This document shows, piece after piece, positions 1,589-24,547 of a stretch of DNA of 64,000 bases. The stretch covers positions 434,001 to 498,000 of the forward strand of contig NW_027271377.1 in the NCBI RefSeq assembly GCF_040938485.1. The letters run 5' to 3'. The translations under genes and the position numbers were made by a program. The number at the start of each line of letters is the position of its first letter. Within the stretch, counting starts at the first letter, position 1. Source of the DNA: Diadema antillarum. Taxonomy: Eukaryota. Under the pieces are notes generated by a model that saw only the letters and a list, made by a program, of their open reading frames with translations, was not told where the DNA came from and did not search any database.

Positions 1589-1657
1589 AGAAAAAGCTGG
1601 AAAAGAAGGTACTTCATCCTCGATGATCAAGGAATCTCTTATTACAAGTCAGATCAA
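1589..1657 (+). CDS. PLEKHA1: PLEKHA1/2 (TAPP) orthologue, internal exon encoding RKSWKRRYFILDDQGISYYKSDQ (second PH domain, N-terminal strands)
   Basis: Acceptor gttttcAG at 1587-1588 and donor GTAAGT at 1658; 69 nt, phase 0/0. The peptide resembles TAPP1 [21 protein letters not shown] as recalled from the known protein. Earlier exons lie upstream of the window. Confidence 0.92.
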
Positions 1658-2264
1658 GTAAGTGATGTAAATATGCAAAGTGACATCCAGATTTGAGTGC
1701 CCTTGGCCTTACAGTGCCTATGTCGTATTTTACTCAACCTTGGACAAGCAGTGAGAGGCAAGTGTTCAAAACTCATATAGGTGCATTTTAAGGAAAGTGA
1801 GGGTGACAAGCAACCTGTCTACATTTGCCTAAAAACAGATGCCTTGTTTAAGATGAGAAGGCAAGAAGAAAGTGGTTGAAACTTGCCAAAGCACTCTGAG
1901 CAGGACAAGAGAATGAGAAGGTGACTTGTCAAAACTAACCGAGGTGCCTTGTTCAGGACATGAGAGGCGAGAAAACAACTTGCCAAAAAATTCACTTTGC
2001 CACCTTGATCAAGGTTAAAAGACCCAAACTCATCAGTGCCTTTTTCGTGACGAGAGAGAGAAGGTGACTCTTTAAGGGTGAGAAGGGTAACTCTGCTACA
2101 ACTCACCTGGGCAATTTGCTAAAAATCTTGTACCCTGAAGGTGCCTTGTTCAGGGTAAGATGATGACTATTCAGAACTTGCCGAGCACCTTGCTTTAAAC
2201 AGGAAGTCGTCTTGATGACTTGGTAAATTTCAACAAGGAGTGTGTTTTGTTTTGATGTAAATTG

Positions 2265-2590
2265 TTTGGACTGACCCAAGTCTGGACTGAGCAATGTTGT
2301 GTGTAAGCATACCATCCCCTCTAGCACGAGGCAGAACACTCTGTCCCTCGGATAGGACAATATGGAGGTCCCGTGTGTGAGAGAGTAACAACTCATGCAC
2401 GTAAAAGATCCCGCTTCATTCATTCATCGTAAAGAGCAGGGTGTTTAACCCGGTGAAGTGCTCCCACCTCAAATCCAACTGGACCCCATGGAAGACCAGC
2501 TTAGTATACTAGTAGCTGAATATGGGCTATCCAGCCATCTTCTCAGATGGAAAATGAACAAACAAAAAACAAACAAACAAACAAACAAAT
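2265..2590 (+). mobile_element. 5'-truncated SINE with Deu/Nin-type central domain and (CAAA)n tail
   Basis: Blocks GAGGTCCCGT (2365), ACGTAAAAGATCCC (2399) and AAGAGCAGGG..CCCGGTG match the DeuSINE/Nin central-domain pattern. A second copy lies at about 31490-31700. The 5' boundary is approximate. Confidence 0.75.
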
Positions 2591-2805
2591 ACTTTTAATC
2601 TGTATCAGTACCTTCTATACCAAACCAAATGTTGCTCATTTAAGGGCTTGGGTCACACTGACTGCAGTGCCACTTACTGCACAAAGCTAATAATCTATGG
2701 AAAGTAGCTTCGCAGCTGAATGTCAAGCATGGCTTTATGACTTGTGAATACATATTTCTTTCTTTCTTTTTTGAAATTTATGTTTTTTGTTGTTTTACTC
2801 TGCAG

Positions 2806-2870
2806 GAGAAGATACACATCCGAAGCATTCCACTGAAGGAGATCTCTTCTTGTAGAATATCAGAACATGG
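2806..2870 (+). CDS. PLEKHA1: PLEKHA1/2 exon encoding EKIHIRSIPLKEISSCRISEH(G)
   Basis: Acceptor tgttttactctgcAG and donor GTAAGT at 2871; 65 nt, phase 0/2. Resembles TAPP1 EKEPLRVIPLKEVHKV. Confidence 0.92.
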
Positions 2871-3313
2871 GTAAGTCTGGAGGCAGTGAAAGACAAGTTC
2901 TGGGAGGCAGACGCTGTACTGACGTAAATGCCGTGGGCCCACGCCGTCCCCCAGTCCCACACAGTGTATTCCATGTCGTCCCCCGGTGCCTGTAATGTGA
3001 CCCGTACGTCACCACAGAGCTCGAAACTGAATCTGTGCTGTGGTGAAATGGGGCAGCCACTTGATAAGGCAATGTAATACAAGTAACCCAGAAATACAGA
3101 CGGATACACATATCTTTTATCATCACCACCTACTGCTGTCTGTCAGCTAACGCATAGCAAAAACTTTTTATGGAATCTGAACATGAGAAAGGCTTAAGCA
3201 AGTATGTAAATGTGAACTTTATAGTCTTCATTACATCATGACAGCTCACAAAGGAATCATGTTGACATGTATGACTAGGATTTACAGAGTCACATTTATT
3301 TCACTTATATTAA

Positions 3314-4133
3314 AGGAATGGTAAAGTATTGGTTGAGGTGAGGATTTCCCTTTTAACTTTTTGTAAGATACTTAGATAATACTGTGTAATGCTGAAGAGT
3401 AAAAAATTTTAAGAGGAATTCAAAGTTTAGTTGATGAAAATTGGTTTTTGAATAATAATAATAATAATTGATAAGATTTATATGACGCCAAATCCACTCT
3501 CCAGAGCGCTCTAGGCGCGGAAGGAAGAGAAAGTGAAGGAGATAAAGGACATACAAATATCAAATACATGTAATGAGTAATCAAATGGAGGCCTTAAACA
3601 GGTGAGTTTTTAGACTACTTTTAAAGGAGTCTGATGAAGAACAATTTTTTATGGCTGAAGGTAAGTTATTCCATAAGGTGGGAGCAGCATGGCCAAAGGC
3701 ACGTGTGCCCCATATTGTAGTGAATCTTGGAATTATAAGAGAACCGGAGTTGGATGAGCGTAGAGATCTAGCAGGGATGTAATTATGGAGTAAGTCAATG
3801 TTATACTGAGGAGCAGCGCCCTGAATGCAATGAAAAGTCAGAAGTAAAATCTTAAAGATAATGCGATCTTTGACTGGTAATGGCCGAGTTATCCAAAAAG
3901 AAAGAAAAACAAAGTGATCTTAATAAAAGGTGGGTCCCACCTTTTGTTAGCATCACTTTGTTTTGGATATCTCAGCCATTTTAAAACCAATTTCCATCAA
4001 ATAAATTTTGAATTCCTCGTAGAATTATATGGTCTTTCATATTTCGTAAAAGATTTCTCATTATCTTGAAAAATCATCATCAAAAAACATTGAAAACCAG
4101 AAGCACCATCTCAACCGAAACTGTACCATCCCT
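3314..4133. mobile_element. TTAA-flanked MITE (Kolobok-type termini AGG...CCT) interrupted by an L2 LINE fragment
   Basis: TTAA at 3310-3313 and 4134-4137. Termini AGGAATGGTAAAGTATTGGTTGAG / CTCAACCGAAACTGTACCATCCCT, with an internal palindrome GGTGGGTCCCACC. Same family as 32083-32498. Confidence 0.75.
3451..3883 (-). mobile_element. L2-clade LINE 3' fragment (ORF2 C-terminus, 3'UTR and (ATT)n tail)
   Basis: The minus strand 3883->3581 reads open: LPVKDRIIFKILLLTFHCIQGAAPQYNIDLLHNYIPARSLRSSNSGSLIIPRFTTIWGTRAFGHAAPTLWNNLPSAIKNCSSSDSFKSSLKTHLFKASI*. This is the typical L2 ORF2 end. The tail is an (ATT)n run at about 3451-3470. Confidence 0.9.
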
Positions 4134-4497
4134 TTAAAAAAGATGGAATTTAATGAAGATTTTGTTTGTCAGTGGGAAACATCTGAGGGTGATGACATCA
4201 TCACTTCATCTGATATTATTGTGAATGTAACCAATTATTCAGAATTCCCACAGCTGTGTATTTTTTATCATGGGCAGGGCTCTCTGGAAGAGCAGGATCT
4301 GCTGGTCTTGATGAGACTACCCTGTGGAAATAAAACCGAAATAAATGAATAAATAAAAAACTGTTTTGTACAATGCCTGATCTTTCAATAATACTTCTAT
4401 GTGGAGTGACCATGGAGTGGCACATCACTCTGACCTCTGACCTTTGACCTCTGACCTCTGACCCTTTTCCTCCCTCTTGATTTTCTCTCTCATTCAG

Positions 4498-4561
4498 ACC
4501 CAGCATTCAGAGGGACAACCTGTTTGAGATTGTCAGTGCGTTACGGACGTTCTATGTACAG
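4498..4561 (+). CDS. PLEKHA1: PLEKHA1/2 exon encoding (G)PSIQRDNLFEIVSALRTFYVQ
   Basis: Acceptor ttttctctctcattcAG and donor GTATTT at 4562; 64 nt, phase 2/0. RDNLFEIV..RTFYVQ is characteristic of the TAPP PH2 domain. Confidence 0.93.
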
Positions 4562-4610
4562 GTATTTAGAAATCGGATATAAGATTGATAAGACAAATAC
4601 AAGACGACTG

Positions 4611-6030
4611 TTTTTAGCTCACCTGAGCCAAAGGCTCAAGTGAGCTATTGCGATCGCCCTTCGTCCGGCGTCCGTCGTGCGTCGTGCGTCGTCCGTCGTC
4701 CGTCGTCCGTCGTCCGTCGTCCGTCGTGCGTAAACTTTTTACATTTTCATCTTCTTCTTGAAAACCCCATGACCGATTTTCATCAAACTTGGCAGGTAGC
4801 ATCCCTAGGGGGTTAGGAACTCAATTTGTTAAAATGGGCACCATGCCCCACCCAGGGGGCCCCCAGGGGGGCCCAAACCCCCAAAAATTAAGGAATCTGT
4901 AAAAATCTTCTTCTCTAGAACCAGAAGTGATAGAGCGAAGTTAATACTATGAGTTAGTACATTGATGACTGTAGTTTCAAGTTTGTTCATGGCAGAATCA
5001 GGGGTGCCCCCCTTGGGACCCAGGGGAGGGGGGTGGGAAAGGGTTCTAATGGGGCCTAAATTGTACATTTTCATCTTCTTCTTGAGAACTCCATGACCCA
5101 TATTCACCAAACTTGGCAGGTAGCATCCCTAGGGGGTTAGGAACTCCATTTGTTAAAATGGGCACCATGACCCACCCAGGGGGCCCCCAGGGGGCCCAAA
5201 CCCCCCAAAATTAAAGAATCCGCAAAAACCTTCTTCTCTAGAACCAGAAGTGATAGAGCTAGGTTAATACTATGAGTTAGCACATTGATGACTGTAGTTT
5301 CAAGTTTGTTCATGGCAGAATCAGGGGTGCCCCCCTTGGGACCCAGGGAGGGGGGGGGGGGGGGGGGGTGAGGAGGGGTCCTAATGGGGCCTAAATTGTA
5401 CATTTTTATCTTCTTCTTGAGAACCCCATGACCCATTTTCACCAAACTTGGCAGGTAGCATTCCTAGGGGGTTAGGATCTCAATTTGTTAAAATGGGCAC
5501 CATGCCCCGCCCAGGGGGCCCCCAGGGGGCCCAAACCCCCCAAATGAAGGAATCTTTAAAAATCTTCTCTAGAATCAGAAGTTATAGAGCTGAGATAATA
5601 CTATGAGTGAGTACATTAATGACTGTAGTTTCAAGTTTGTTCATAGGAGATCCAGGGGTGCCCCTCTTGGGGGTAGGGGGGAGGGGGGTGGTTGGAAGGG
5701 TCCAAATGGGGGCCTGAATTGTACATTTTCATCTTCTTCCTGAAAACCTCATGATGGATTTTTTGTCAAACTTGGCAGGTAGCATCCCTAGGTGGTCAGG
5801 ATCTCAATTTATCAAACTGGGCACCATGCCCCACCCAGAGGGCCCCAGGGGGCCCCAATTCCCCCAAATTAAGGAATCTTGAAAAAATTGGGCCCTTATT
5901 GTACATTTTCATCTTCCACTTGAGAATGCCTCGTCAAATTTTGGTAGAGCTGTGAATAATTTAGATTAGTGACTGCGTGAAAGGTGAACTTGCGATACTC
6001 AGGTGAGCGCTAGACCCGCGGGTCTCTTGT
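4611..6030 (+). mobile_element. Helentron/HINE-type (Pearl/DINE-1-like) non-autonomous element with an internal tandem array of about 323-335 bp units
   Basis: In order: T-run; 5' hairpin AGCTCACCTGAGCC-AAA-GGCTCAAGTGAGCT (4616-4646); (CGTC/GTCGTCC)n microsatellite 4661-4730; tandem units starting at 4740, 5064, 5399, 5722 and 5902 (the fourth shortened, the fifth partial); 3' subTIR CTCAGGTGAGC (5998-6008); hairpin AGACCC-GC-GGGTCT; end CTTGT. Confidence 0.85.
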
Positions 6031-6044
6031 ATTTGGATGATATA

Positions 6045-6447
6045 TCACTTGGTCTACTCGCACTTCGTCTAATAGCCCTTTAGTCTCAACCCACGTGGTC
6101 TAATCCCATTTTGCCTACAACCAGTAAGTCTAACAACCATTTAGTCCAATTGCCACTTAGCCTCATTACCAGTTCATCTACTCCCAGATGGGCTATGCCC
6201 ATTTCGTCTAATACCCACAGTTTATTAGACAAAATGGAGAAAAAAAAATCCAAGGAGTCAAAATTGCAATTAGACCATCTGGTCATTAGATGAAATGATA
6301 ATTAGCCAAACTGGACATTAGACCAAGTGAGGATTAGACCAAACGGGCATTAGACGAAATTGATAGTAGACCAAATGAGTTTAGCTGTAGTGGTGTTAGA
6401 CAAAGTGGGAATGAGACGATCTGATATTAGACCAAGTGGCAATAAAC
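6045..6447. mobile_element. Foldback-type MITE with about 15-bp subterminal repeats
   Basis: The left arm repeats a CACTTGGTCTAAT-like unit, and the right arm repeats its reverse complement ATTAGACCAAGTG, ending GTGGCAATAAAC. Confidence 0.7.
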
Positions 6448-6814
6448 TTTTTATTTGTTACTCAGAAAAATATGTATTTTTAGATGAAATTAACATGTTC
6501 ATGATCACTCTATAGTCTAACTTGTGCTGATTAAAACACTGGTTAGCAAACCAGTTTTGCCCCTTTACTAGGTAGGAATTGATTATTTATGTGAATTTTT
6601 ATCTGTTTATGTATTAATTGATAGATAATGATTAGCTGAAGATATAGTTGTATTGGTAGATAAGTTTATAAAGGTGTATATTATGTGTATATATTATATA
6701 TTTAGTTTTTGCAATGAGAATGCATTTGGCGTAAGTGTGTGTGTATCCATTACATTTCATTACATTATATTGTATTAATACATTTATGTAGCACATTTTC
6801 TGTTTACCAATATG

Positions 6815-6900
6815 TTCAAATGCGCTTTGCTATTGGATCATTAATGAAACAAGTGAGTTTTTAGCTGTTTTTTGAAGATGATAAGAGATTGCTGGTTGCA
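6815..6900 (-). mobile_element. Short L2-like 3' remnant
   Basis: The minus strand reads ...IIFKKQLKTHLFH*, followed by an AAGCGCATTTGA-type 3'UTR. Confidence 0.55.
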
Positions 6901-8016
6901 GAGATTACTGTTATAAATATTTACTTGTGTTAAAGTAAAAGAAAAGATGTCCCCAGAACAAACACAGTGTATCACAATGAAAGAGCCAACCAAGTACTAA
7001 CAGATACCCCAATGTAGCCTGAAGGAAATCAAGTGCAGATGATTAGAGTGAATTCTTTAGTCAAGGAAATGACAAAGCGATCCAAAGTTTTGAAGCCCTT
7101 TTGTACTCTGAAACTTTCCAGTTCTGATGATTCCTCTGTTTTTAATGCCTGTTGCCAAGCAACTAATATATTGTGCTTATCTGTTTGGGGGAAAATGAGC
7201 AGTGTAGATCTTTATTTATTTTTATTTTTTTGCCTGCCACTCCTGGGGGAGCTGTGACACAGATGTACAAATTTATCTGCTCCATCACTGGAAAAAGATG
7301 TTCGGAGATGCATAGTACCAGAAGTCTGAGAGAAAGATGAAGTCATCATCTTGAAAATTTATCAAGTCCAGATGTCCTAACTGTGCATTTTTCTTGACAT
7401 CTCTTTTGACAACATGTTGGCAAAGTATTGCAGGAGAGTAATATGATTTGATATCTTTAGAAATAATTTGCTACCTTTAGGAAATGGGGAGAATATGTAA
7501 TAGAATTGTCATGATATGATGATTCAGCTCCAGAAACCCATTTTTTATGGTTTGGTGCTGTTTCTTTAAATTTTGTTATTTTCTTTTCATAATAACTCTT
7601 TCATACGAAAGAGTCAATAAAAACAACATCAACAAACAAATATTTTGCTCTAGCTTGAGTGCAGGATTTTCTAACGCTTCTTATGTGGTAAACGTATGAA
7701 TAATTCTTAAATTGGCAACATGTTTAAGAAGATCATATTTCTTATTTCTCTGTCAAATTGGCACATTTTTGAAAACTCCCTTGTAAAGTTAGTGCAGATT
7801 AAGCGGCTCTAACCAACTCCACCTAATATTTTTCCAATGCAGGACATGCAGTAAAAAATCATGTTTGCCAATTTGATGAAGACAAAGCTGATAATTTCCA
7901 CAGGAAAATTACACAAGGGCCTGATGGGTTTTAGTAGGAGTATGAGCCATCTAGTCGTGCATTATCTCTGCAACATTGCTGTAACTGATGAATAAGAATG
8001 ATGCTTCTTCCCATAG

Positions 8017-8100
8017 GCATATTCACCGGACGAGATGGAGTCATGGGTTCAAGCCATCAACAATGCTGTTGCTGCCAAAAAGAGAAGCTTAGAGCAAAGC
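8017..8100 (+). CDS. PLEKHA1: PLEKHA1/2 exon encoding AYSPDEMESWVQAINNAVAAKKRSLEQS (PH C-terminal helix)
   Basis: Acceptor cttcttcccatAG and donor GTAAGT at 8101; 84 nt, phase 0/0. Resembles TAPP1 ADSPEEMHSWIKAVSGAI, including the invariant PH tryptophan. Confidence 0.93.
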
Positions 8101-8427
8101 GTAAGTTCGGTGCCCTCATCGCAATTTTGGCATCATCAAGATTTGTCGCCTTTGCTTTGATTTTTTTTTTTAATGTAACATGCAAATTGGTAGATGACAC
8201 CCAGAACAAAGCAAAAACAAAAGCAAAATAACAGCAACAATTGCCAAGATAATTGCTGTTTGTTATAGTATTCGTGGAGGAATACTTCATATGAAGCAAA
8301 TGGTTGTTACTTGTTCAAGATGACTGAGGTGGACAAGAAAAAAAAAGTAATGAAAACAAAAGATAAATCATTACTTTTTTACAGCTTTTGTAGTGGATTA
8401 TTGGATGTAGAGTTACAGGGTCCTAAT

Positions 8428-8538
8428 AGGCGTTTTCACATCAGCCCGATGTTTCGAAATAGCGCGCTATTTTCTGACTTGGGAAATTAAAAAAATATCT
8501 CGAGCTTGGATTTTTATCGGGCTGATGTGAAAACGCCT
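8428..8538. mobile_element. 111-bp MITE with perfect 23-bp TIRs and a 3-bp TSD (PIF/Harbinger-like)
   Basis: AGGCGTTTTCACATCAGCCCGAT ... ATCGGGCTGATGTGAAAACGCCT, with AAT on both flanks (8425-8427, 8539-8541). Confidence 0.85.
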
Positions 8539-10151
8539 AATGAAACAACAGCTAGCAAGCTTCAAGCAATTTGCAGTTTAAAATCATATCTCATCACATA
8601 TTTCTGGAGTAAGATGCTATATAATGATGAATAGATTTCATAGTTTGGTCAAATTGAAAAACCATTCACTGTTGTTTCCTGGTCATGTTTATTGATGTGA
8701 TTCTGCTAATACTTATTGTACGAAAGAGTACATATATACAGTATGTATGCAAGTTGATGGGTATCTGGAGCTATGTTTAGAAATGCTTCATGTCTTTAAC
8801 TTTGAAACATCATGCTGATTATCTTAGATGCAGCTTTGCAAATGTATGTTTTGCAGATCTTTTTGCAGTTAGGAAAGTTAGGAATATATATGATATATAG
8901 TTAGGAATATGGGAATATAATATATATATAAATAATATATATAATTGAATATAATATAAATAATTGAATATAATATAAATGAAGGAATATAATAAATGAG
9001 GAATATGATTCTTTCTGTTTGAGATTATTCTACCCGATGCTTCTTTTTCTTAAAAGAGCAGAGAATTCAAGAAATATCTGCGATGTGACTGAGAGCAAAA
9101 AGAGTATGAACAATCGCTAGAAAAAAATATTGTTCTCTTTTGCATGGAAGTCATAAGATATAATGACAAGAGTTTGTGTCAATATTTCAACCAAAGCCTG
9201 CTGTTGACTCTATACCTGAAAGTGCACATTTTTACAACCCTTAATGTTTTGGTTCCATTTCAGTTCTCAGCTCTTTTGAGTCAGGAGGAAGAATATCTTT
9301 AAAATAAAACAAACAGAAAAGCCAGAGAGGTGGGAAGATTCTTATGGTAACAACATGCTGTAGGCTTAGATGTGCATTTTTTTTCTTTATTCTTACATAT
9401 TCCACTGCCTTCATTTATTTGATTTGTCATTTTTTTACATTAGAATGACTGACAAGTATTTTCACATACCTGGTAGCTTTTGACAAGCTCCTCTCACAGC
9501 ATAGTGTCAATAACATTGCATATCACAATAGTGCATTTTTCGTTGTTGATTGATTTGTAAGTGATAGCATGACAAGGGTTTGTGCAAGTTGCATACTTGG
9601 AAATTAGCTCAGTGCCAGCCCTTCAAAGCCACAGCAAAGTTTCTGAAAACAAAAGCACAACAGAGTTTGCTTGGATGGATGTCTATGAAATAAAAAGAGA
9701 ACTTCCAGATAGTGTTGCATTTGATTGGCTCTTCTCCCTACTGAATCTCCTGACTCACACAGTCATATATAGCAGATATCAACAAAATGAAAGTATGTTG
9801 TAAGAGAAAATGTTTAGAATTTTCTCGGGTTGGTTGTTTTATGCGATTGATGTGAACCCTGAGAATATGTAGCACTTGATTAGCACTTCACCTCACATCA
9901 CCTTAGTCTCCTTCATAAAGTAGGCACAAGGGTCCATCGAACAGCCTGGTGTCACCACCGTCTGGCATTGTCCAATGGTTTTCCATGTCAGTGATGGGTT
10001 GTTGAGGCTTGTCCATCCTTTACCGCTGTCCATCCAACACTTGGTTTGACTGCCAACAATAGTTGGAAGAATCGCTGAAAAGATTCATCTCATTGGAATG
10101 TCAACTGGATAAAAGTTCATTTTGCCACAATCAGCTGTAATTTACCTGTTT

Positions 10152-10193
10152 GATGAGACTTTCGCCTACTGGACCTGTAGGCTTCTTCAGATC
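10152..10193 (-). ncRNA. Minimal type I hammerhead ribozyme motif (minus-strand copy)
   Basis: The minus strand reads GAT-CTGAAGA-A-GCCTAC-AGGTCCA-GTAGGC-GAAA-GTCTC-ATC. This gives a complete core, a 6-bp stem II, a near-palindromic mini stem III and a 3-bp stem I. Activity is untested. Confidence 0.7.
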
Positions 10194-10382
10194 GATTGCT
10201 ACTGTGAGAGAGTTGTTTCGATGGATAAGGGAAGTCATCCACATTCACAAGCAACAAGGAAGAACTTTCAACCGAGACCTGGGGCAATACTTGCTTTCTT
10301 CAATCTACAGTCCGATTCTCTCAGATCGGCGTGTGCCAGCTACGTTGGCTAGTGGGAAAACCACTCTCTCACAGTAGCGATC

Positions 10383-10424
10383 AATCTGAAGAAGCCTACA
10401 GATCCAGTAGGCGAAAGTCTCATC
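10383..10424 (+). ncRNA. Minimal type I hammerhead ribozyme motif (plus-strand copy)
   Basis: CTGAAGA 10386-10392, extra A, stem II GCCTAC 10394-10399 / GTAGGC 10407-10412, GAAA 10413-10416, then GTCTC. Predicted cleavage is after C10421. Stem I is weaker here (AAT/ATC). Confidence 0.65.
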
Positions 10425-11140
10425 AAACAAGTAAAGTACAACTGATTGTGGCAAAATGAACTTTTATCCAATCTTAGGAAGATCGTTGTGGAGTATGACA
10501 CGACTGAACCCTGATTGCTTCCTCCCCTTCACTGGACGAGGGATTCCTGGGAACCCTGTCGGTCATGTGACTGGGCTTCACGCACAATCCTTTTGTCTTC
10601 CAGTCATTTTTGAGCAGATTCCGAGAAAGCTGCCTGAAGCACTTTATCTCAGCCATCAAGATTTTTCTTGGAGGTCTTGGCTGTTGTCGTTCGAAATTGT
10701 GCAACCATGTGGCAGAATGGAATCAATCAGCAAAACTAACGCTTCGATCTTCGTAAGTGGAAAGCTGATGTCACTGCTCGTCCATCAAGGTCTTACCGTG
10801 TTTTGCCAGGGATGATGTTGCAGTGAAGAAGCCTGGTTCAGATATCTCAGACATTGAGTACCTGTCTTTGGTGAGGGTGATAGTAAGATTCTTGAAGGCA
10901 TCTACTCACTCCAGCTGTTTTCCACCCATGTGAAACTTTGCCGTAGCGTTGTTTACACTGCCGACTATGACTCTACATTTATAGTCGGTACTATCTTCCA
11001 TCCCATATGCACCCACCCTATTCATGCAAGGCTGTTTGCCACACTTTGGAGTTCCTTGTTGCGCCTCCCAACAGATCTGTGTCTCCTGAAGAGTTCAAGT
11101 TGATGTCAGTGTGGTAGCTGTAAAGTACTTGTGTCATGGT

Positions 11141-11414
11141 TCAAATTCGTGAAATTCTTCCGTCGAGATGTTTTCGTTGCAACTGATTGACAAATTGCCC
11201 TACATCGACGTAAATATGCACTGAATTAAACATCTCGATGGAAGAATTTCATGAATTTGAATAATTACGCAGTACCTGCTGCATGCTATAAGAAGTAGAA
11301 CCAACACTTGCTGTCAGGAGGAAGCTCAGTGGTCTAGTGGAGATGACGCCTGTCCGGCGATCAGAAGGTCGTAGGTTTGAATCCTGCTCGAGTATGTACG
11401 CCCATGATTTCTTC
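11141..11414 (+). mobile_element. 274-bp insertion with a 9-bp TSD carrying a hairpin and a tRNA-like Pol III cassette
   Basis: TGTCATGGT flanks both ends (11132-11140, 11415-11423), and the RTE sequence is collinear across it. Inverted repeat 11141-11173 / 11228-11260; A box TGGTCTAGTGG 11330-11340; B box GGTTTGAATCC 11374-11384. Confidence 0.75.
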
Positions 11415-13389
11415 TGTCATGGTGTTCTCCAGGAAGAGATTGTGGAGGATCAGTGAGAGCGAACAGCCTTCCGGGATTCTAACTGAGGTCTCACGGTGGC
11501 CTGCCAGCTGACTGTGGAGGAGGATCGCACCTGATGAAGGAGTTTTCTGTCACTTCCACGATCTAGATCAGACCCTCTTTGTTCATCCCAGGTGATGTAG
11601 CAGAAGTCAGCAAATGGTATCAACCAGGCATGCGGTGCCACATGGGCAAAAGATACCCCATCAATAGTGATATCGAGTGCATCCATTGAGCAGGCTGTAG
11701 TTGGTCATCACAGTGCCATGTCTGTCAGTTTGTGACTGTTGAATATTCTGCTATCGGCCTGCCAGAGTTATCTGTGAAGACTGAAGCCTTGTTCTCAAGT
11801 GCCCATGTCAGTTTCTGCGGTATGTTGTTGTTTCCTCTGACATGCCTGATTCAATATTTTTGCGCTGTCCAATGATCTACAGAATTGCTCCTTGACTTTG
11901 TTCATCTTCTTCCTTACTAGGCTGTTGGTCTCACAATTCACAGAAACTTTAGAAAGGAACTTATTTTTCATAAGCATAGTTGATTCAAAGAGCCTTTGTT
12001 GTAACTAATACCAATCTTCACCTTATTCTTACATTTTGTTCCAGCAATCAGTGATTATCATTATTTGTAGTGACTGTACATTGTTTTTAGATATATTGTT
12101 ATTTTGTCATCACTGTCAGTTTCATGTGGGGGAAATTTTTTTTTTTCATACAATACTCTTATTTTTTTTTTATGGGGGGGGGAGGCAGAAAGATCTTAGC
12201 TTGTTAGACTTTGTATAGAGTAAAGTTCCCTTTTTGAATGAGGTTGTATTATTATCATTTCGCTGAACTACTGTGAGATTTGTATGTTAGAGTTTTATTC
12301 GTGCAAGTTCTTTTTGGCAGCAATGATTGTGTACACAGGAGGAATAGATGCCTAGGCACCTAATGTACACCAATGTTCGGAGAAAGAATTCTCTGCATGT
12401 ACAGGAGGAATAGAATGCACCCCTTCTCCCTACTGTGTAACAACAGAGAGATTATGCTTAGCCCTTCATACACCCATTGTGGTTTCCAGCCAGTGCCGAG
12501 GTACTGGTCATCCAGCATATGATGTGTTTTTAGTCCATTGACCCCACTGAAAGACTCCTCAACAGGAAAAGAGGAACAACAACAAAAACAACAACGGGAT
12601 ATTGTGGGATTATCTATGACAATGGAATTGATCCCGCTTACAATACAATCTACGAAAGGCAGTAGGCATAGATGTCAACAAAAACAGTGATTACACACAA
12701 AAAAAAAGGATGAACAGAACATGACACCTCGTGCTAATAAACATACACCTGGCTATGTTGAGAGTCAAAGAACTCTCAACATACACCTAGGTACGTTGAA
12801 AAGAACTTTACACTTGCCAATGTTAGTGTGGTTTCAATTAGCCCTGACTTTCATCAGGCTAGCATTGATCAAACGTGGATTGCTATCCAGCAATATGATT
12901 TACTCCTCACTCTTTTTGTTCCCCTCAATGACTGCACTTAGGCCACTAGAATTGCAATTATGATGAATGTTTAAACTTGCTAAGGATGAAATTGAAAATC
13001 CATGATCTGCCATCTCTCCTCCATGTTTCTGACACTAGTTGCACCTGTTGCACCTGTTGGTGTGTGTGTGTGTGTGGGGGGGGGGGGGGAGGGGGAGGGG
13101 GGCAATCAAGGGTTACCAGTGAAAGTGGTCACCCAGACAGGTGAACACAAGATATAAGTGATACCTCTTGCTGATGTTTGGACAAAGCGTACTTTTCTCT
13201 ACAGATTGATTTTGGAGGGGGGGGGGGGGGGGGGGGGTTGGGGTTTCATGAGCCACTCTTGTTGGATTATGACTACCAGCAGATTACCTCTTTAATAGGT
13301 GATCTGATATGATGTGATAGTGTTACTCTATTACCAAATGTCCTATCATTCAGTTTTTACTAAACAAGAAGAGTAGATTTAATAGTAAT

Positions 13390-24333: not shown

Positions 24334-24547
24334 NNNNNNNNNNNNNNNNNNNNNNNNNNNNNNNNNNNNNNNNNNNNNNNNNNNNNNNNNNNNNNNNNNN
24401 NNNNNNNNNNNNNNNNNNNNNNNNNNNNNNNNNNNNNNNNNNNNNNNNNNNNNNNNNNNNNNNNNNNNNNNNNNNNNNNNNNNNNNNNNNNNNNNNNNNN
24501 NNNNNNNNNNNNNNNNNNNNNNNNNNNNNNNNNNNNNNNNNNNNNNN
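24334..24547. other. Assembly gap (N run)
   Basis: Run of N. Confidence 1.

What the first reader, a model, noticed from the sequence alone, without database searches (positions are those of the whole stretch)
10106..10470. Two opposed hammerhead-ribozyme cores in an inverted-end Penelope insertion inside a host intron
Seen: 108-bp inverted repeats flank a GIY-YIG C-terminal coding remnant. Each repeat contains CTGAAGA-A-[GCCTAC/GTAGGC stem II]-GAAA-GTCTC, and the two copies differ in the stem II loop and stem I but not in the core or stem II. Known: Penelope-like elements carry minimal type I hammerheads whose very short, self-complementary stem III is thought to work as a dimer, and an extra A between A9 and G10.1 is a tolerated variant. 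Inference: the + copy is sense to the PLEKHA pre-mRNA, so it could cut the intron co-transcriptionally. Alternatively, the 108-bp foldback could sequester it as dsRNA, an ADAR or Dicer substrate, giving a self-silenced ribozyme. Because the copies face opposite ways, a sense transcript has only one active-sense core and would need a trans partner.
Basis: partly seen in the sequence, partly recalled or inferred. Interest (0 to 1): 0.75.

Follow-up and report, generated by a model that had tools for sequence, protein, structure and literature searches.

The report
Dead Penelope retrotransposon stub with twin hammerheads
This is a short, broken, head-to-head insertion of an abundant Penelope-like jumping gene, probably inside an intron of a PH-domain gene. 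Each half carries that element's own minimal hammerhead ribozyme motif, an arrangement already described and probably inert here.

Summary
The arms are 113 nt, not 108 (10106-10218 / 10358-10470, 94% complementary). The insertion runs from 10072 to 10470, because the minus-strand copy carries an extra 34-nt "tail".

Between the arms lies the last 52 codons plus stop of a Penelope-like element (PLE) RT/GIY-YIG ORF. Each arm has a minimal type I hammerhead: CUGAAGA, an extra A, a 6-bp helix II, GAAA, AGUCU, then H17. That matches the min-HHR class of Cervera & de la Peña 2014, who also reported paired motifs on opposite strands.

The motif is not chance: 0-0.02 are expected per window, and 85 exact-pattern copies occur genome-wide against 0 for the control. 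Five other PLE families in this genome keep the same architecture with different helices.

The host gene is on the + strand (TAPP/PLEKHA-like PH exons at 1589-1657 and 8017-8100), so the + copy is sense and probably intronic.

Intron cutting is not supported. The + copy has only 2 bp of helix I, there is no same-strand partner within 64 kb, and the predicted RNA is a -217 kcal/mol hairpin that buries both cores. Published min-HHRs are inactive as monomers. No RNA run was listed.

Earlier notes of this scan describe the same kind of stub elsewhere in this genome. Verdict: ordinary.

The parts
10072..10105 (-). 34-nt optional PLE 'tail' extension at the 3' end of the minus-strand copy
   Evidence: The same about 34 nt follow the element's shared 3' end in about 10 other family copies but not in the rest. 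In each of 7 inverted pairs only one arm has it. This matches the 30-40 bp tail of PMC8557442 and PMC11167929.
10106..10218 (-). Inverted, 5'-truncated copy of the PLE 3' end (left arm)
   Evidence: It is 113 nt and 94% complementary to 10358-10470. It matches the family at 79-94% identity.
10152..10193 (-). Minimal type I hammerhead motif, minus-strand copy, with a 3-bp helix I (GAU/AUC). Predicted cut between 10155 and 10154.
   Evidence: It passes the strict descriptor, with 0 hits in 100 shuffles. Core, extra A, 6-bp helix II, GAAA, AGUCU and C17 are all present.
10219..10377 (+). Remnant of the PLE ORF: the last 52 codons plus stop. [quoted passage not shown]
   Evidence: BLASTP gives E 1e-26 to L030:940-1662 and E 8e-5 to the end of the 842-aa RT+GIY-YIG ORF in L038. 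It aligns with the invariant R, E and N columns. 8 of 10 aligned sequences hit PF01541.
10358..10470 (+). Right arm: the 3' end of the plus-strand PLE copy, in the short-tail form
10384..10423 (+). Minimal type I hammerhead motif, plus-strand copy, sense to the host gene. Helix I has only 2 bp. Predicted cut at 10421/10422.
   Evidence: It is found only with the relaxed descriptor (helix I >= 2 bp), which gives 0.02 hits per shuffle. The G-to-A change at position 2.3 is derived relative to the family.
1589..1657 (+). Host exon encoding the start of a PH domain, flanked by an AG acceptor and a GTAAGT donor
   Evidence: PF00169 match at C489:435586-435666, + strand, 24.8 bits. The splice signals were read directly.
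8017..8100 (+). Host exon encoding the C-terminal helix of the PH domain, ending in a GTAAGT donor 1.97 kb upstream of the insertion
   Evidence: The best PDB match is TAPP1 (PLEKHA1) C-terminal PH domain 1EAZ, E 0.021, followed by PLEKHA6.

Best explanation
The region 10072-10470 is one old, dead insertion of an abundant Penelope-like retrotransposon. It consists of two 5'-truncated copies of the element's 3' end joined head-to-head at 10218/10219. One copy is 147 nt on the minus strand, with the long tail. The other is 252 nt on the plus strand, with the short tail and the last 52 codons of the RT/GIY-YIG ORF.

The hammerhead motif is the element's own. It sits 9 nt after the stop codon in every family copy and at the equivalent place in other PLE families.

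Inferred mechanism of origin: the PLE protein cut both target strands and primed reverse transcription on both, each from one of its two internal start sites. The two short cDNAs were then joined.

In the parental element the motif is thought to act only as a dimer or with protein help on multimeric PLE RNA. In this copy it has no demonstrated role. In host pre-mRNA the two arms should zip into a 113-bp imperfect hairpin that buries both ribozyme cores, so self-cleavage of the intron is unlikely.
For: The family has at least 53 DNA matches at 79-88% identity, and 975 first-look protein candidates. Longer relatives encode RVT_1 plus GIY-YIG.

The same inverted arrangement recurs with a different junction in each copy. 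Many (-)/(+) motif pairs lie about 200-400 bp apart among the 85 exact-pattern hits, against 0 for the control. The tail sits at one end only.

The motif fits the published min-HHR traits: an extra nucleotide after A9, G10.1-C11.1, a long helix II and a short helix I. H17 is C, A or U and never G in 41 copies.

Five further PLE families keep the architecture with different helices I, II and III, in 13 of the 19 loci scanned for this (L038, L047-L064), downstream of the EN-coding stretch. About 0.001 hits per locus would be expected by chance.

The foldback has MFE -216.7 kcal/mol, z -20. The active-like monomer folds are worth -5.7 and -9.4, and the dimer helix III alone about -1.3 kcal/mol.

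The derived changes split 4 to 3 between the arms (read). That fits two arms born identical, each about 3% decayed since. The insertion is present in both haplotype contigs.

Literature: PMC4209133, PMC8557442, PMC11167929.
Against: No RNA data could be obtained; no run was listed. Inactivity is therefore inferred, not shown.

Both cores and both helix II stems are intact despite about 6% divergence between the arms. That is expected by chance at P about 0.2.

The twin-priming origin is extrapolated from in vitro work on an Anolis PLE. No clear target-site duplication and no empty site were found.

Rfam hammerhead models do not recognise the motif.
Confidence: 0.85

Rival explanations
1. The sense (+) hammerhead cleaves the host PLEKHA-like pre-mRNA intron co-transcriptionally. 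This would happen either alone or with a trans partner RNA or PLE protein, and would affect host gene expression.
For: The core and helix II are intact, and the + copy is sense to the host gene. A PLE hammerhead can be protein-assisted (PMC11167929). ORFs of 842 to 856 aa without internal stops occur in other PLE families of this genome.
Against: The + copy has only 2 bp of helix I. No same-sense partner lies within 64 kb. The complementary arm 140 nt upstream gives a -217 kcal/mol hairpin. Min-HHR monomers show no detectable cleavage and dimers only weak cleavage (PMC4209133). There is no sign of selection on this copy. In the family, G12 is lost in 12 of 41 copies through CpG decay.
Confidence: 0.04
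2. The intronic 113-bp foldback is used as double-stranded RNA. It would be edited by ADAR or diced into small RNAs that target the PLE family, making it a by-product silencing trigger rather than a ribozyme.
For: The predicted hairpin is long and very stable in either transcript direction (z -20). It is probably transcribed as part of the host intron.
Against: No RNA or small-RNA data were available. Seven mismatches interrupt the stem. Dozens of similar foldbacks exist, so this one has no special role. Intron lariats are short-lived.
Confidence: 0.1
3. It is a non-LTR retrozyme, or another non-autonomous element, that propagates as a circular RNA.
For: Hammerhead-bearing short repeats related to PLE pLTRs exist in animals (bioRxiv 10.64898/2026.07.22.740005).
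Against: There is no direct or tandem repeat. The copies are inverted and contain an ORF remnant. Each inverted pair in the genome has its own junction. Only the allelic contig shares this one.
Confidence: 0.01

Closest known systems
min-HHR of metazoan Penelope-like elements (Cervera & de la Peña 2014, PMC4209133)
   Same: It is type I with the CUGANGA/GAAA/UH core. It has an unpaired nucleotide between A9 and G10.1, a conserved G10.1-C11.1 pair, a long (6-bp) helix II and a very short helix I. Helix III is reduced to a few self-complementary nucleotides. It lies in the PLE terminal repeat or 3' region, and it also occurs as paired motifs on opposite strands 100-700 bp apart.
   Different: Helix III is a 5-nt AGUCU (2 bp plus one central U), so the dimer helix would carry a U.U mismatch rather than being a perfect palindrome. 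A second family here has the analogous ACUGU. Activity was not tested.
Canonical EN+ PLE insertion anatomy (Craig et al. 2021, PMC8557442; Frangieh et al. 2024, PMC11167929)
   Same: Heavy 5' truncation, an adjacent inverted 5'-truncated copy forming inverted repeats, a 30-40 bp tail at only one end, an RT plus C-terminal GIY-YIG ORF in longer relatives, and a hammerhead near the 3' end.
   Different: This is only a 399-bp stub with no RT left. The clade (Penelope/Poseidon, Neptune or Nematis) was not determined.
Rfam Hammerhead_1 / HH9 / HH10 intronic hammerheads
   Same: The same catalytic core, and an intronic, sense-strand location as for amniote HH9/HH10.
   Different: There is no stable helix III and no loop-loop tertiary contacts. 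There was no Rfam match at E <= 10. It is a repeat copy, not a conserved single-copy locus.

Membership tests
Hammerhead ribozyme, minimal type I (PLE min-HHR) | Catalytic core C3-U-G-A-N-G-A9, G12-A-A14, A15.1...U16.1-H17 | tested here: met
   Both copies have the full core. The H17 column is C17/A18/T6/G0 in 41 family copies.
Hammerhead ribozyme, minimal type I (PLE min-HHR) | Helix II closed by G10.1-C11.1 and supported by compensatory changes | tested here: met
   Within the family there are two helix II forms, A-U and G-C, plus G.U and A.C intermediates. Across families, 4 of 6 pairs change on both sides. Caveat: the cross-family sequences were picked by a descriptor that demands pairing. 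The independent evidence is their position downstream of the EN-coding stretch, against about 0.001 chance hits per locus.
Hammerhead ribozyme, minimal type I (PLE min-HHR) | Helix I formed by the flanks next to C3 and H17 | tested here: inconclusive
   The minus copy has 3 bp (GAU/AUC). The plus copy has 2 bp with a C.A mismatch at 1.3-2.3. There is no covariation within the family, but helix I differs and still pairs in other families.
Hammerhead ribozyme, minimal type I (PLE min-HHR) | Unpaired nucleotide between A9 and G10.1; self-complementary 15.2-16.2 | tested here: met
   The extra A is present in all six families. G15.2/C16.2 are complementary, with one central U.
Hammerhead ribozyme, minimal type I (PLE min-HHR) | Self-cleavage at H17 | not testable with these tools
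   No RNA run was listed. Predicted folds do not favour the active form.
Rfam hammerhead families (curated covariance models) | Score against a curated hammerhead model | tested here: not met
   There was no hammerhead hit at E <= 10 on 9000-11600 or on 10130-10450. This is expected for motifs lacking helix III.
Penelope-like element (EN+) | Single ORF with RT followed by a C-terminal GIY-YIG endonuclease in longer relatives | tested here: met
   L037, same family: RVT_1 E 4.6e-8 plus a weak GIY-YIG match. L038: RVT_1 E 1.2e-9 plus PF01541 E 0.0011. PF01541 is hit by 8 of 10 aligned sequences, best E 1.5e-6. A profile search against PDB gave nothing.
Penelope-like element (EN+) | The window peptide is homologous to the PLE EN C-terminus | tested here: met
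Penelope-like element (EN+) | Inverted 5'-truncated copy and a 30-40 bp tail at one end | tested here: met
Non-LTR retrozyme | Tandem same-strand repeats, each with a hammerhead | tested here: not met
   No direct repeats in 9500-11100, and no other family copy in the window.
Host gene: TAPP/PLEKHA1-2-like tandem PH protein | PH-domain exons on the + strand flanking the site, i.e. an intron location | tested here: inconclusive
   Two PH exons upstream with splice signals, and an earlier PH exon 34 kb upstream of the 1589-1657 exon. The best PDB match is TAPP1, E 0.021. No exon downstream of 10470 was identified.

The most novel reading that the evidence does not exclude
The sense-strand min-HHR, or the 113-bp intronic hairpin that contains it, is actually processed in vivo. 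It might be cleaved with help from trans PLE RNA or protein, or edited or diced. In that case a dead PLE stub would influence the TAPP/PLEKHA-like transcript or feed small-RNA silencing of the PLE family.
Probability: 0.08. Interest if true: 0.45.

Novelty: new member of a known kind. Interest (0 to 1): 0.15.

Why it matters
It matters little by itself. It is one more decayed copy of a hammerhead-bearing Penelope-like element, in an arrangement already described.

The modest value lies in the family survey. At least six PLE families in one genome keep the same minimal hammerhead architecture with different helices. Two of them use an odd-length helix III with a central U. Inverted pairs consistently carry the 34-nt tail on one arm only. 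This fits the published model in which the PLE enzyme primes on both DNA strands from two internal start sites.

Tried and rejected
- Rfam cmscan at permissive thresholds on 2.6 kb and on 321 nt gave no hammerhead hit.
- The search for public RNA runs listed none. End mapping, editing and small-RNA tests were therefore impossible, and read laying was not used.
- Within-family covariation was uninformative: one compensatory event, no better than shuffles.
- Pfam on the window peptide and on L030's EN segment alone gave nothing. A PDB profile search with the EN alignment gave nothing.
- Pfam on ten long window ORFs gave nothing, and one regex attempt found no host exon. The exons came from the PF00169 genome scan and a second regex.
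- The retrozyme reading and the propagating-foldback reading were rejected.
- The target-site duplication is unresolved. A shared GGAAGA lies near both flanks but is offset, and both haplotype contigs are filled, so there is no empty site.
No copy was singled out for revival.
- The N runs in the window were left alone.

Full report
**Observation.** The window holds an inverted repeat with arms at 10106-10218 and 10358-10470. The arms are 113 nt, 106/113 complementary and 139 nt apart.

Both arms carry the string CTGAAGA, A, GCCTAC, 7 nt, GTAGGC, GAAA, GTCT, C. In hammerhead numbering the + copy reads as follows:
- C3-A9: 10386-10392
- Extra A: 10393
- Helix II: 10394-10399 paired with 10407-10412
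- G12-A14: 10413-10415
- A15.1, G15.2, U, C16.2, U16.1: 10416-10420
- C17: 10421

The mirror copy on the minus strand runs 10190-10155.

I wrote a descriptor after the published min-HHR definition and scanned the window on both strands.
- Strict form (helix I of at least 3 bp): only the minus copy is found, with 0 hits in 100 dinucleotide shuffles.
- Relaxed form (helix I of at least 2 bp, U3-A8 cores allowed): both copies and nothing else are found, with 0.02 hits per shuffle.

**What the insertion is.** The 252 nt at 10219-10470 have at least 53 matches in the window's own 1.75-Gb genome at 79-88% identity. A 99% copy lies on contig C213, which is the other haplotype in reverse orientation.

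Longer relatives continue upstream into frames with the RT YVDD motif and an endonuclease block.
- A 610-aa ORF of the same family hits RVT_1 (E 4.6e-8), with a weak GIY-YIG match.
- An intact 842-aa ORF of a distant family hits RVT_1 (E 1.2e-9) and PF01541 GIY-YIG (E 0.0011).
- Eight of the ten aligned sequences (nine EN segments from several families plus the window peptide) hit PF01541, best E 1.5e-6.

The window peptide (10219-10374, stop at 10375-10377) matches the end of the family's EN-containing segment at 79% identity (E 1e-26). It also matches residues 804-832 of the 842-aa ORF (E 8e-5). It covers the invariant Arg, Glu and Asn columns of the alignment.

**True boundaries.** The 34 nt to the left of the left arm (10072-10105) also belong to the element. 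The same stretch follows the shared 3' end in about ten other copies and is absent from the rest. In each of the seven inverted pairs I examined, exactly one arm has it.

This is the 30-40 bp "tail" that Craig et al. describe as often present at only one end (PMC8557442). Frangieh et al. trace it to two adjacent internal reverse-transcription start sites (PMC11167929).

The insertion is thus 10072-10470. It comprises a 147-nt minus-strand copy with the long tail and a 252-nt plus-strand copy with the short tail, joined head-to-head at 10218/10219.

Other inverted pairs of the family have other junctions. Each is therefore a separate event, not a propagating foldback element.

Frangieh et al. 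also showed that a PLE protein cleaves and extends both target strands. That gives a ready, but inferred, origin for such head-to-head stubs.

**Is the hammerhead real?** Within the family, the core and helix II are conserved. H17 is C, A or U and never G.

Covariation inside the family is no better than shuffles. It amounts to two helix II forms, A-U and G-C. G.U and A.C intermediates turn up among the 85 exact-pattern copies genome-wide, against 0 for the reversed-pattern control.

The stronger evidence comes from other families. I scanned 19 loci from more distant PLE families (32-51% identity in the EN-containing segment). In 13 of them the descriptor finds a motif downstream of the EN-coding stretch, and in nearly all of these on the strand of the EN match (in L047 it lies about 1.2 kb away on the opposite strand), often with a second inverted copy. 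About 0.001 hits per locus would be expected by chance.

Five further families show the same architecture with different helix I, II and III sequences. All have the extra A, G10.1-C11.1, mostly a 6-bp helix II, a 2-4 bp helix I and a 4-5-nt helix III. Two of them have the U3-A8 core variant. On a nine-sequence alignment, 4 of 6 helix II pairs change on both sides. This count is circular, because the descriptor demands pairing; the position argument is not.

All of these traits are the ones listed for metazoan PLE min-HHRs by Cervera & de la Peña (PMC4209133). They also report dual motifs 100-700 bp apart on opposite strands.

Rfam's curated hammerhead models do not match. That is expected for a motif without a helix III.

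**Host context.** A PF00169 scan of the genome hits the window at 1586-1666 on the + strand. Reading the sequence gives two exons:
- 1589-1657, with an AG acceptor and a GTAAGT donor, encoding the start of a PH domain.
- 8017-8100, encoding the PH C-terminal helix and ending in GTAAGT.

The best PDB match of the second exon is the C-terminal PH domain of TAPP1/PLEKHA1 (1EAZ, E 0.021), followed by PLEKHA6. A first PH domain ends about 34 kb upstream of the 1589-1657 exon.

The gene is therefore on the + strand, and the + hammerhead is sense. The insertion lies 2 kb past a donor site. No downstream exon was found, so "intronic" is probable (about 0.75), not proven.

**Does it cut the intron?** Nothing supports that.
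- The + copy has lost the third helix I pair. This is a G-to-A change at a CpG, derived relative to the family.
- No other copy of the family lies in the 64 kb, so there is no cis partner for a dimer.
- As RNA, 10096-10480 folds into a full-length hairpin of -216.7 kcal/mol (z -20).
- The active-like monomer folds are worth -5.7 kcal/mol (+ copy) and -9.4 kcal/mol (- copy). The AGUCU dimer helix alone is worth about -1.3 kcal/mol.
- Published min-HHRs do not cleave as monomers and cleave only weakly as dimers.
- An active Anolis PLE hammerhead needed its protein, and no RNA-seq ends were seen at its site.

The seven arm differences split 4 to 3 as derived states (read). That fits two arms that were identical at birth, each about 3% decayed since.

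Missing the 46 essential positions by chance has P about 0.2, so there is no sign of selection. In the family at large, CpG decay has destroyed G12 in 12 of 41 copies and changed C11.1 in 17.

No RNA run was listed for this stretch. Cleavage ends, editing and small RNAs could therefore not be examined.

**Verdict.** The feature is real but ordinary: a dead PLE stub with its family's minimal hammerheads. Earlier notes of this scan describe the same kind of head-to-head stub elsewhere in this genome, and call the genome a sea urchin, which I did not verify.

No copy was singled out for revival.

Noticed in passing
window 11323-11395 (+): tRNA-like sequence (Rfam RF00005, 30.4 bits, E 0.001) about 850 bp downstream of the insertion.
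   Followed up: no
L038 (G000:C3:671500-677500); also C390 and C1436: Tandem PLE copies of a distant family carry ORFs of 842 to 856 aa without internal stops. EN matches on C390 and C1436 recur every 2,528 bp. A U3-A8 variant min-HHR follows the end of the 842-aa ORF in L038 and recurs 2,531 nt away, where the next ORF ends. Described only.
   Followed up: partly
L050, L052, L063, L064 and window 10416-10420: Two unrelated PLE families use a 5-nt helix III with a central U (AGUCU and ACUGU) instead of a 4-nt palindrome. The presumed dimer helix would therefore carry a U.U mismatch.
   Followed up: partly
L004/5, L009/10, L011, L020/29, L025, L026 and window 10072-10470: In all seven inverted PLE pairs examined, exactly one arm carries the 34-nt tail extension and the other ends at the short site.
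   Followed up: partly
G000:C213:1-10000 (L046) versus window 2001-12978: Contig C213 is the allelic haplotype in reverse orientation. It is 94-98% identical over most aligned blocks, with indels and gaps between about 3.4 and 8.5 kb, and the PLE insertion is shared at 99%. Many family loci come in such near-identical pairs, so copy counts are inflated by up to about 2-fold.
   Followed up: partly
family alignment, columns of window 10412-10413: The CpG spanning C11.1-G12 has decayed to TG in 17 and to CA in 12 of 41 copies. This is the commonest way this family's ribozyme core is lost.
   Followed up: yes
window 24334-24547, 48826-49052, 49253-49418: Runs of N (gaps or masked stretches), left untouched.
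   Followed up: no
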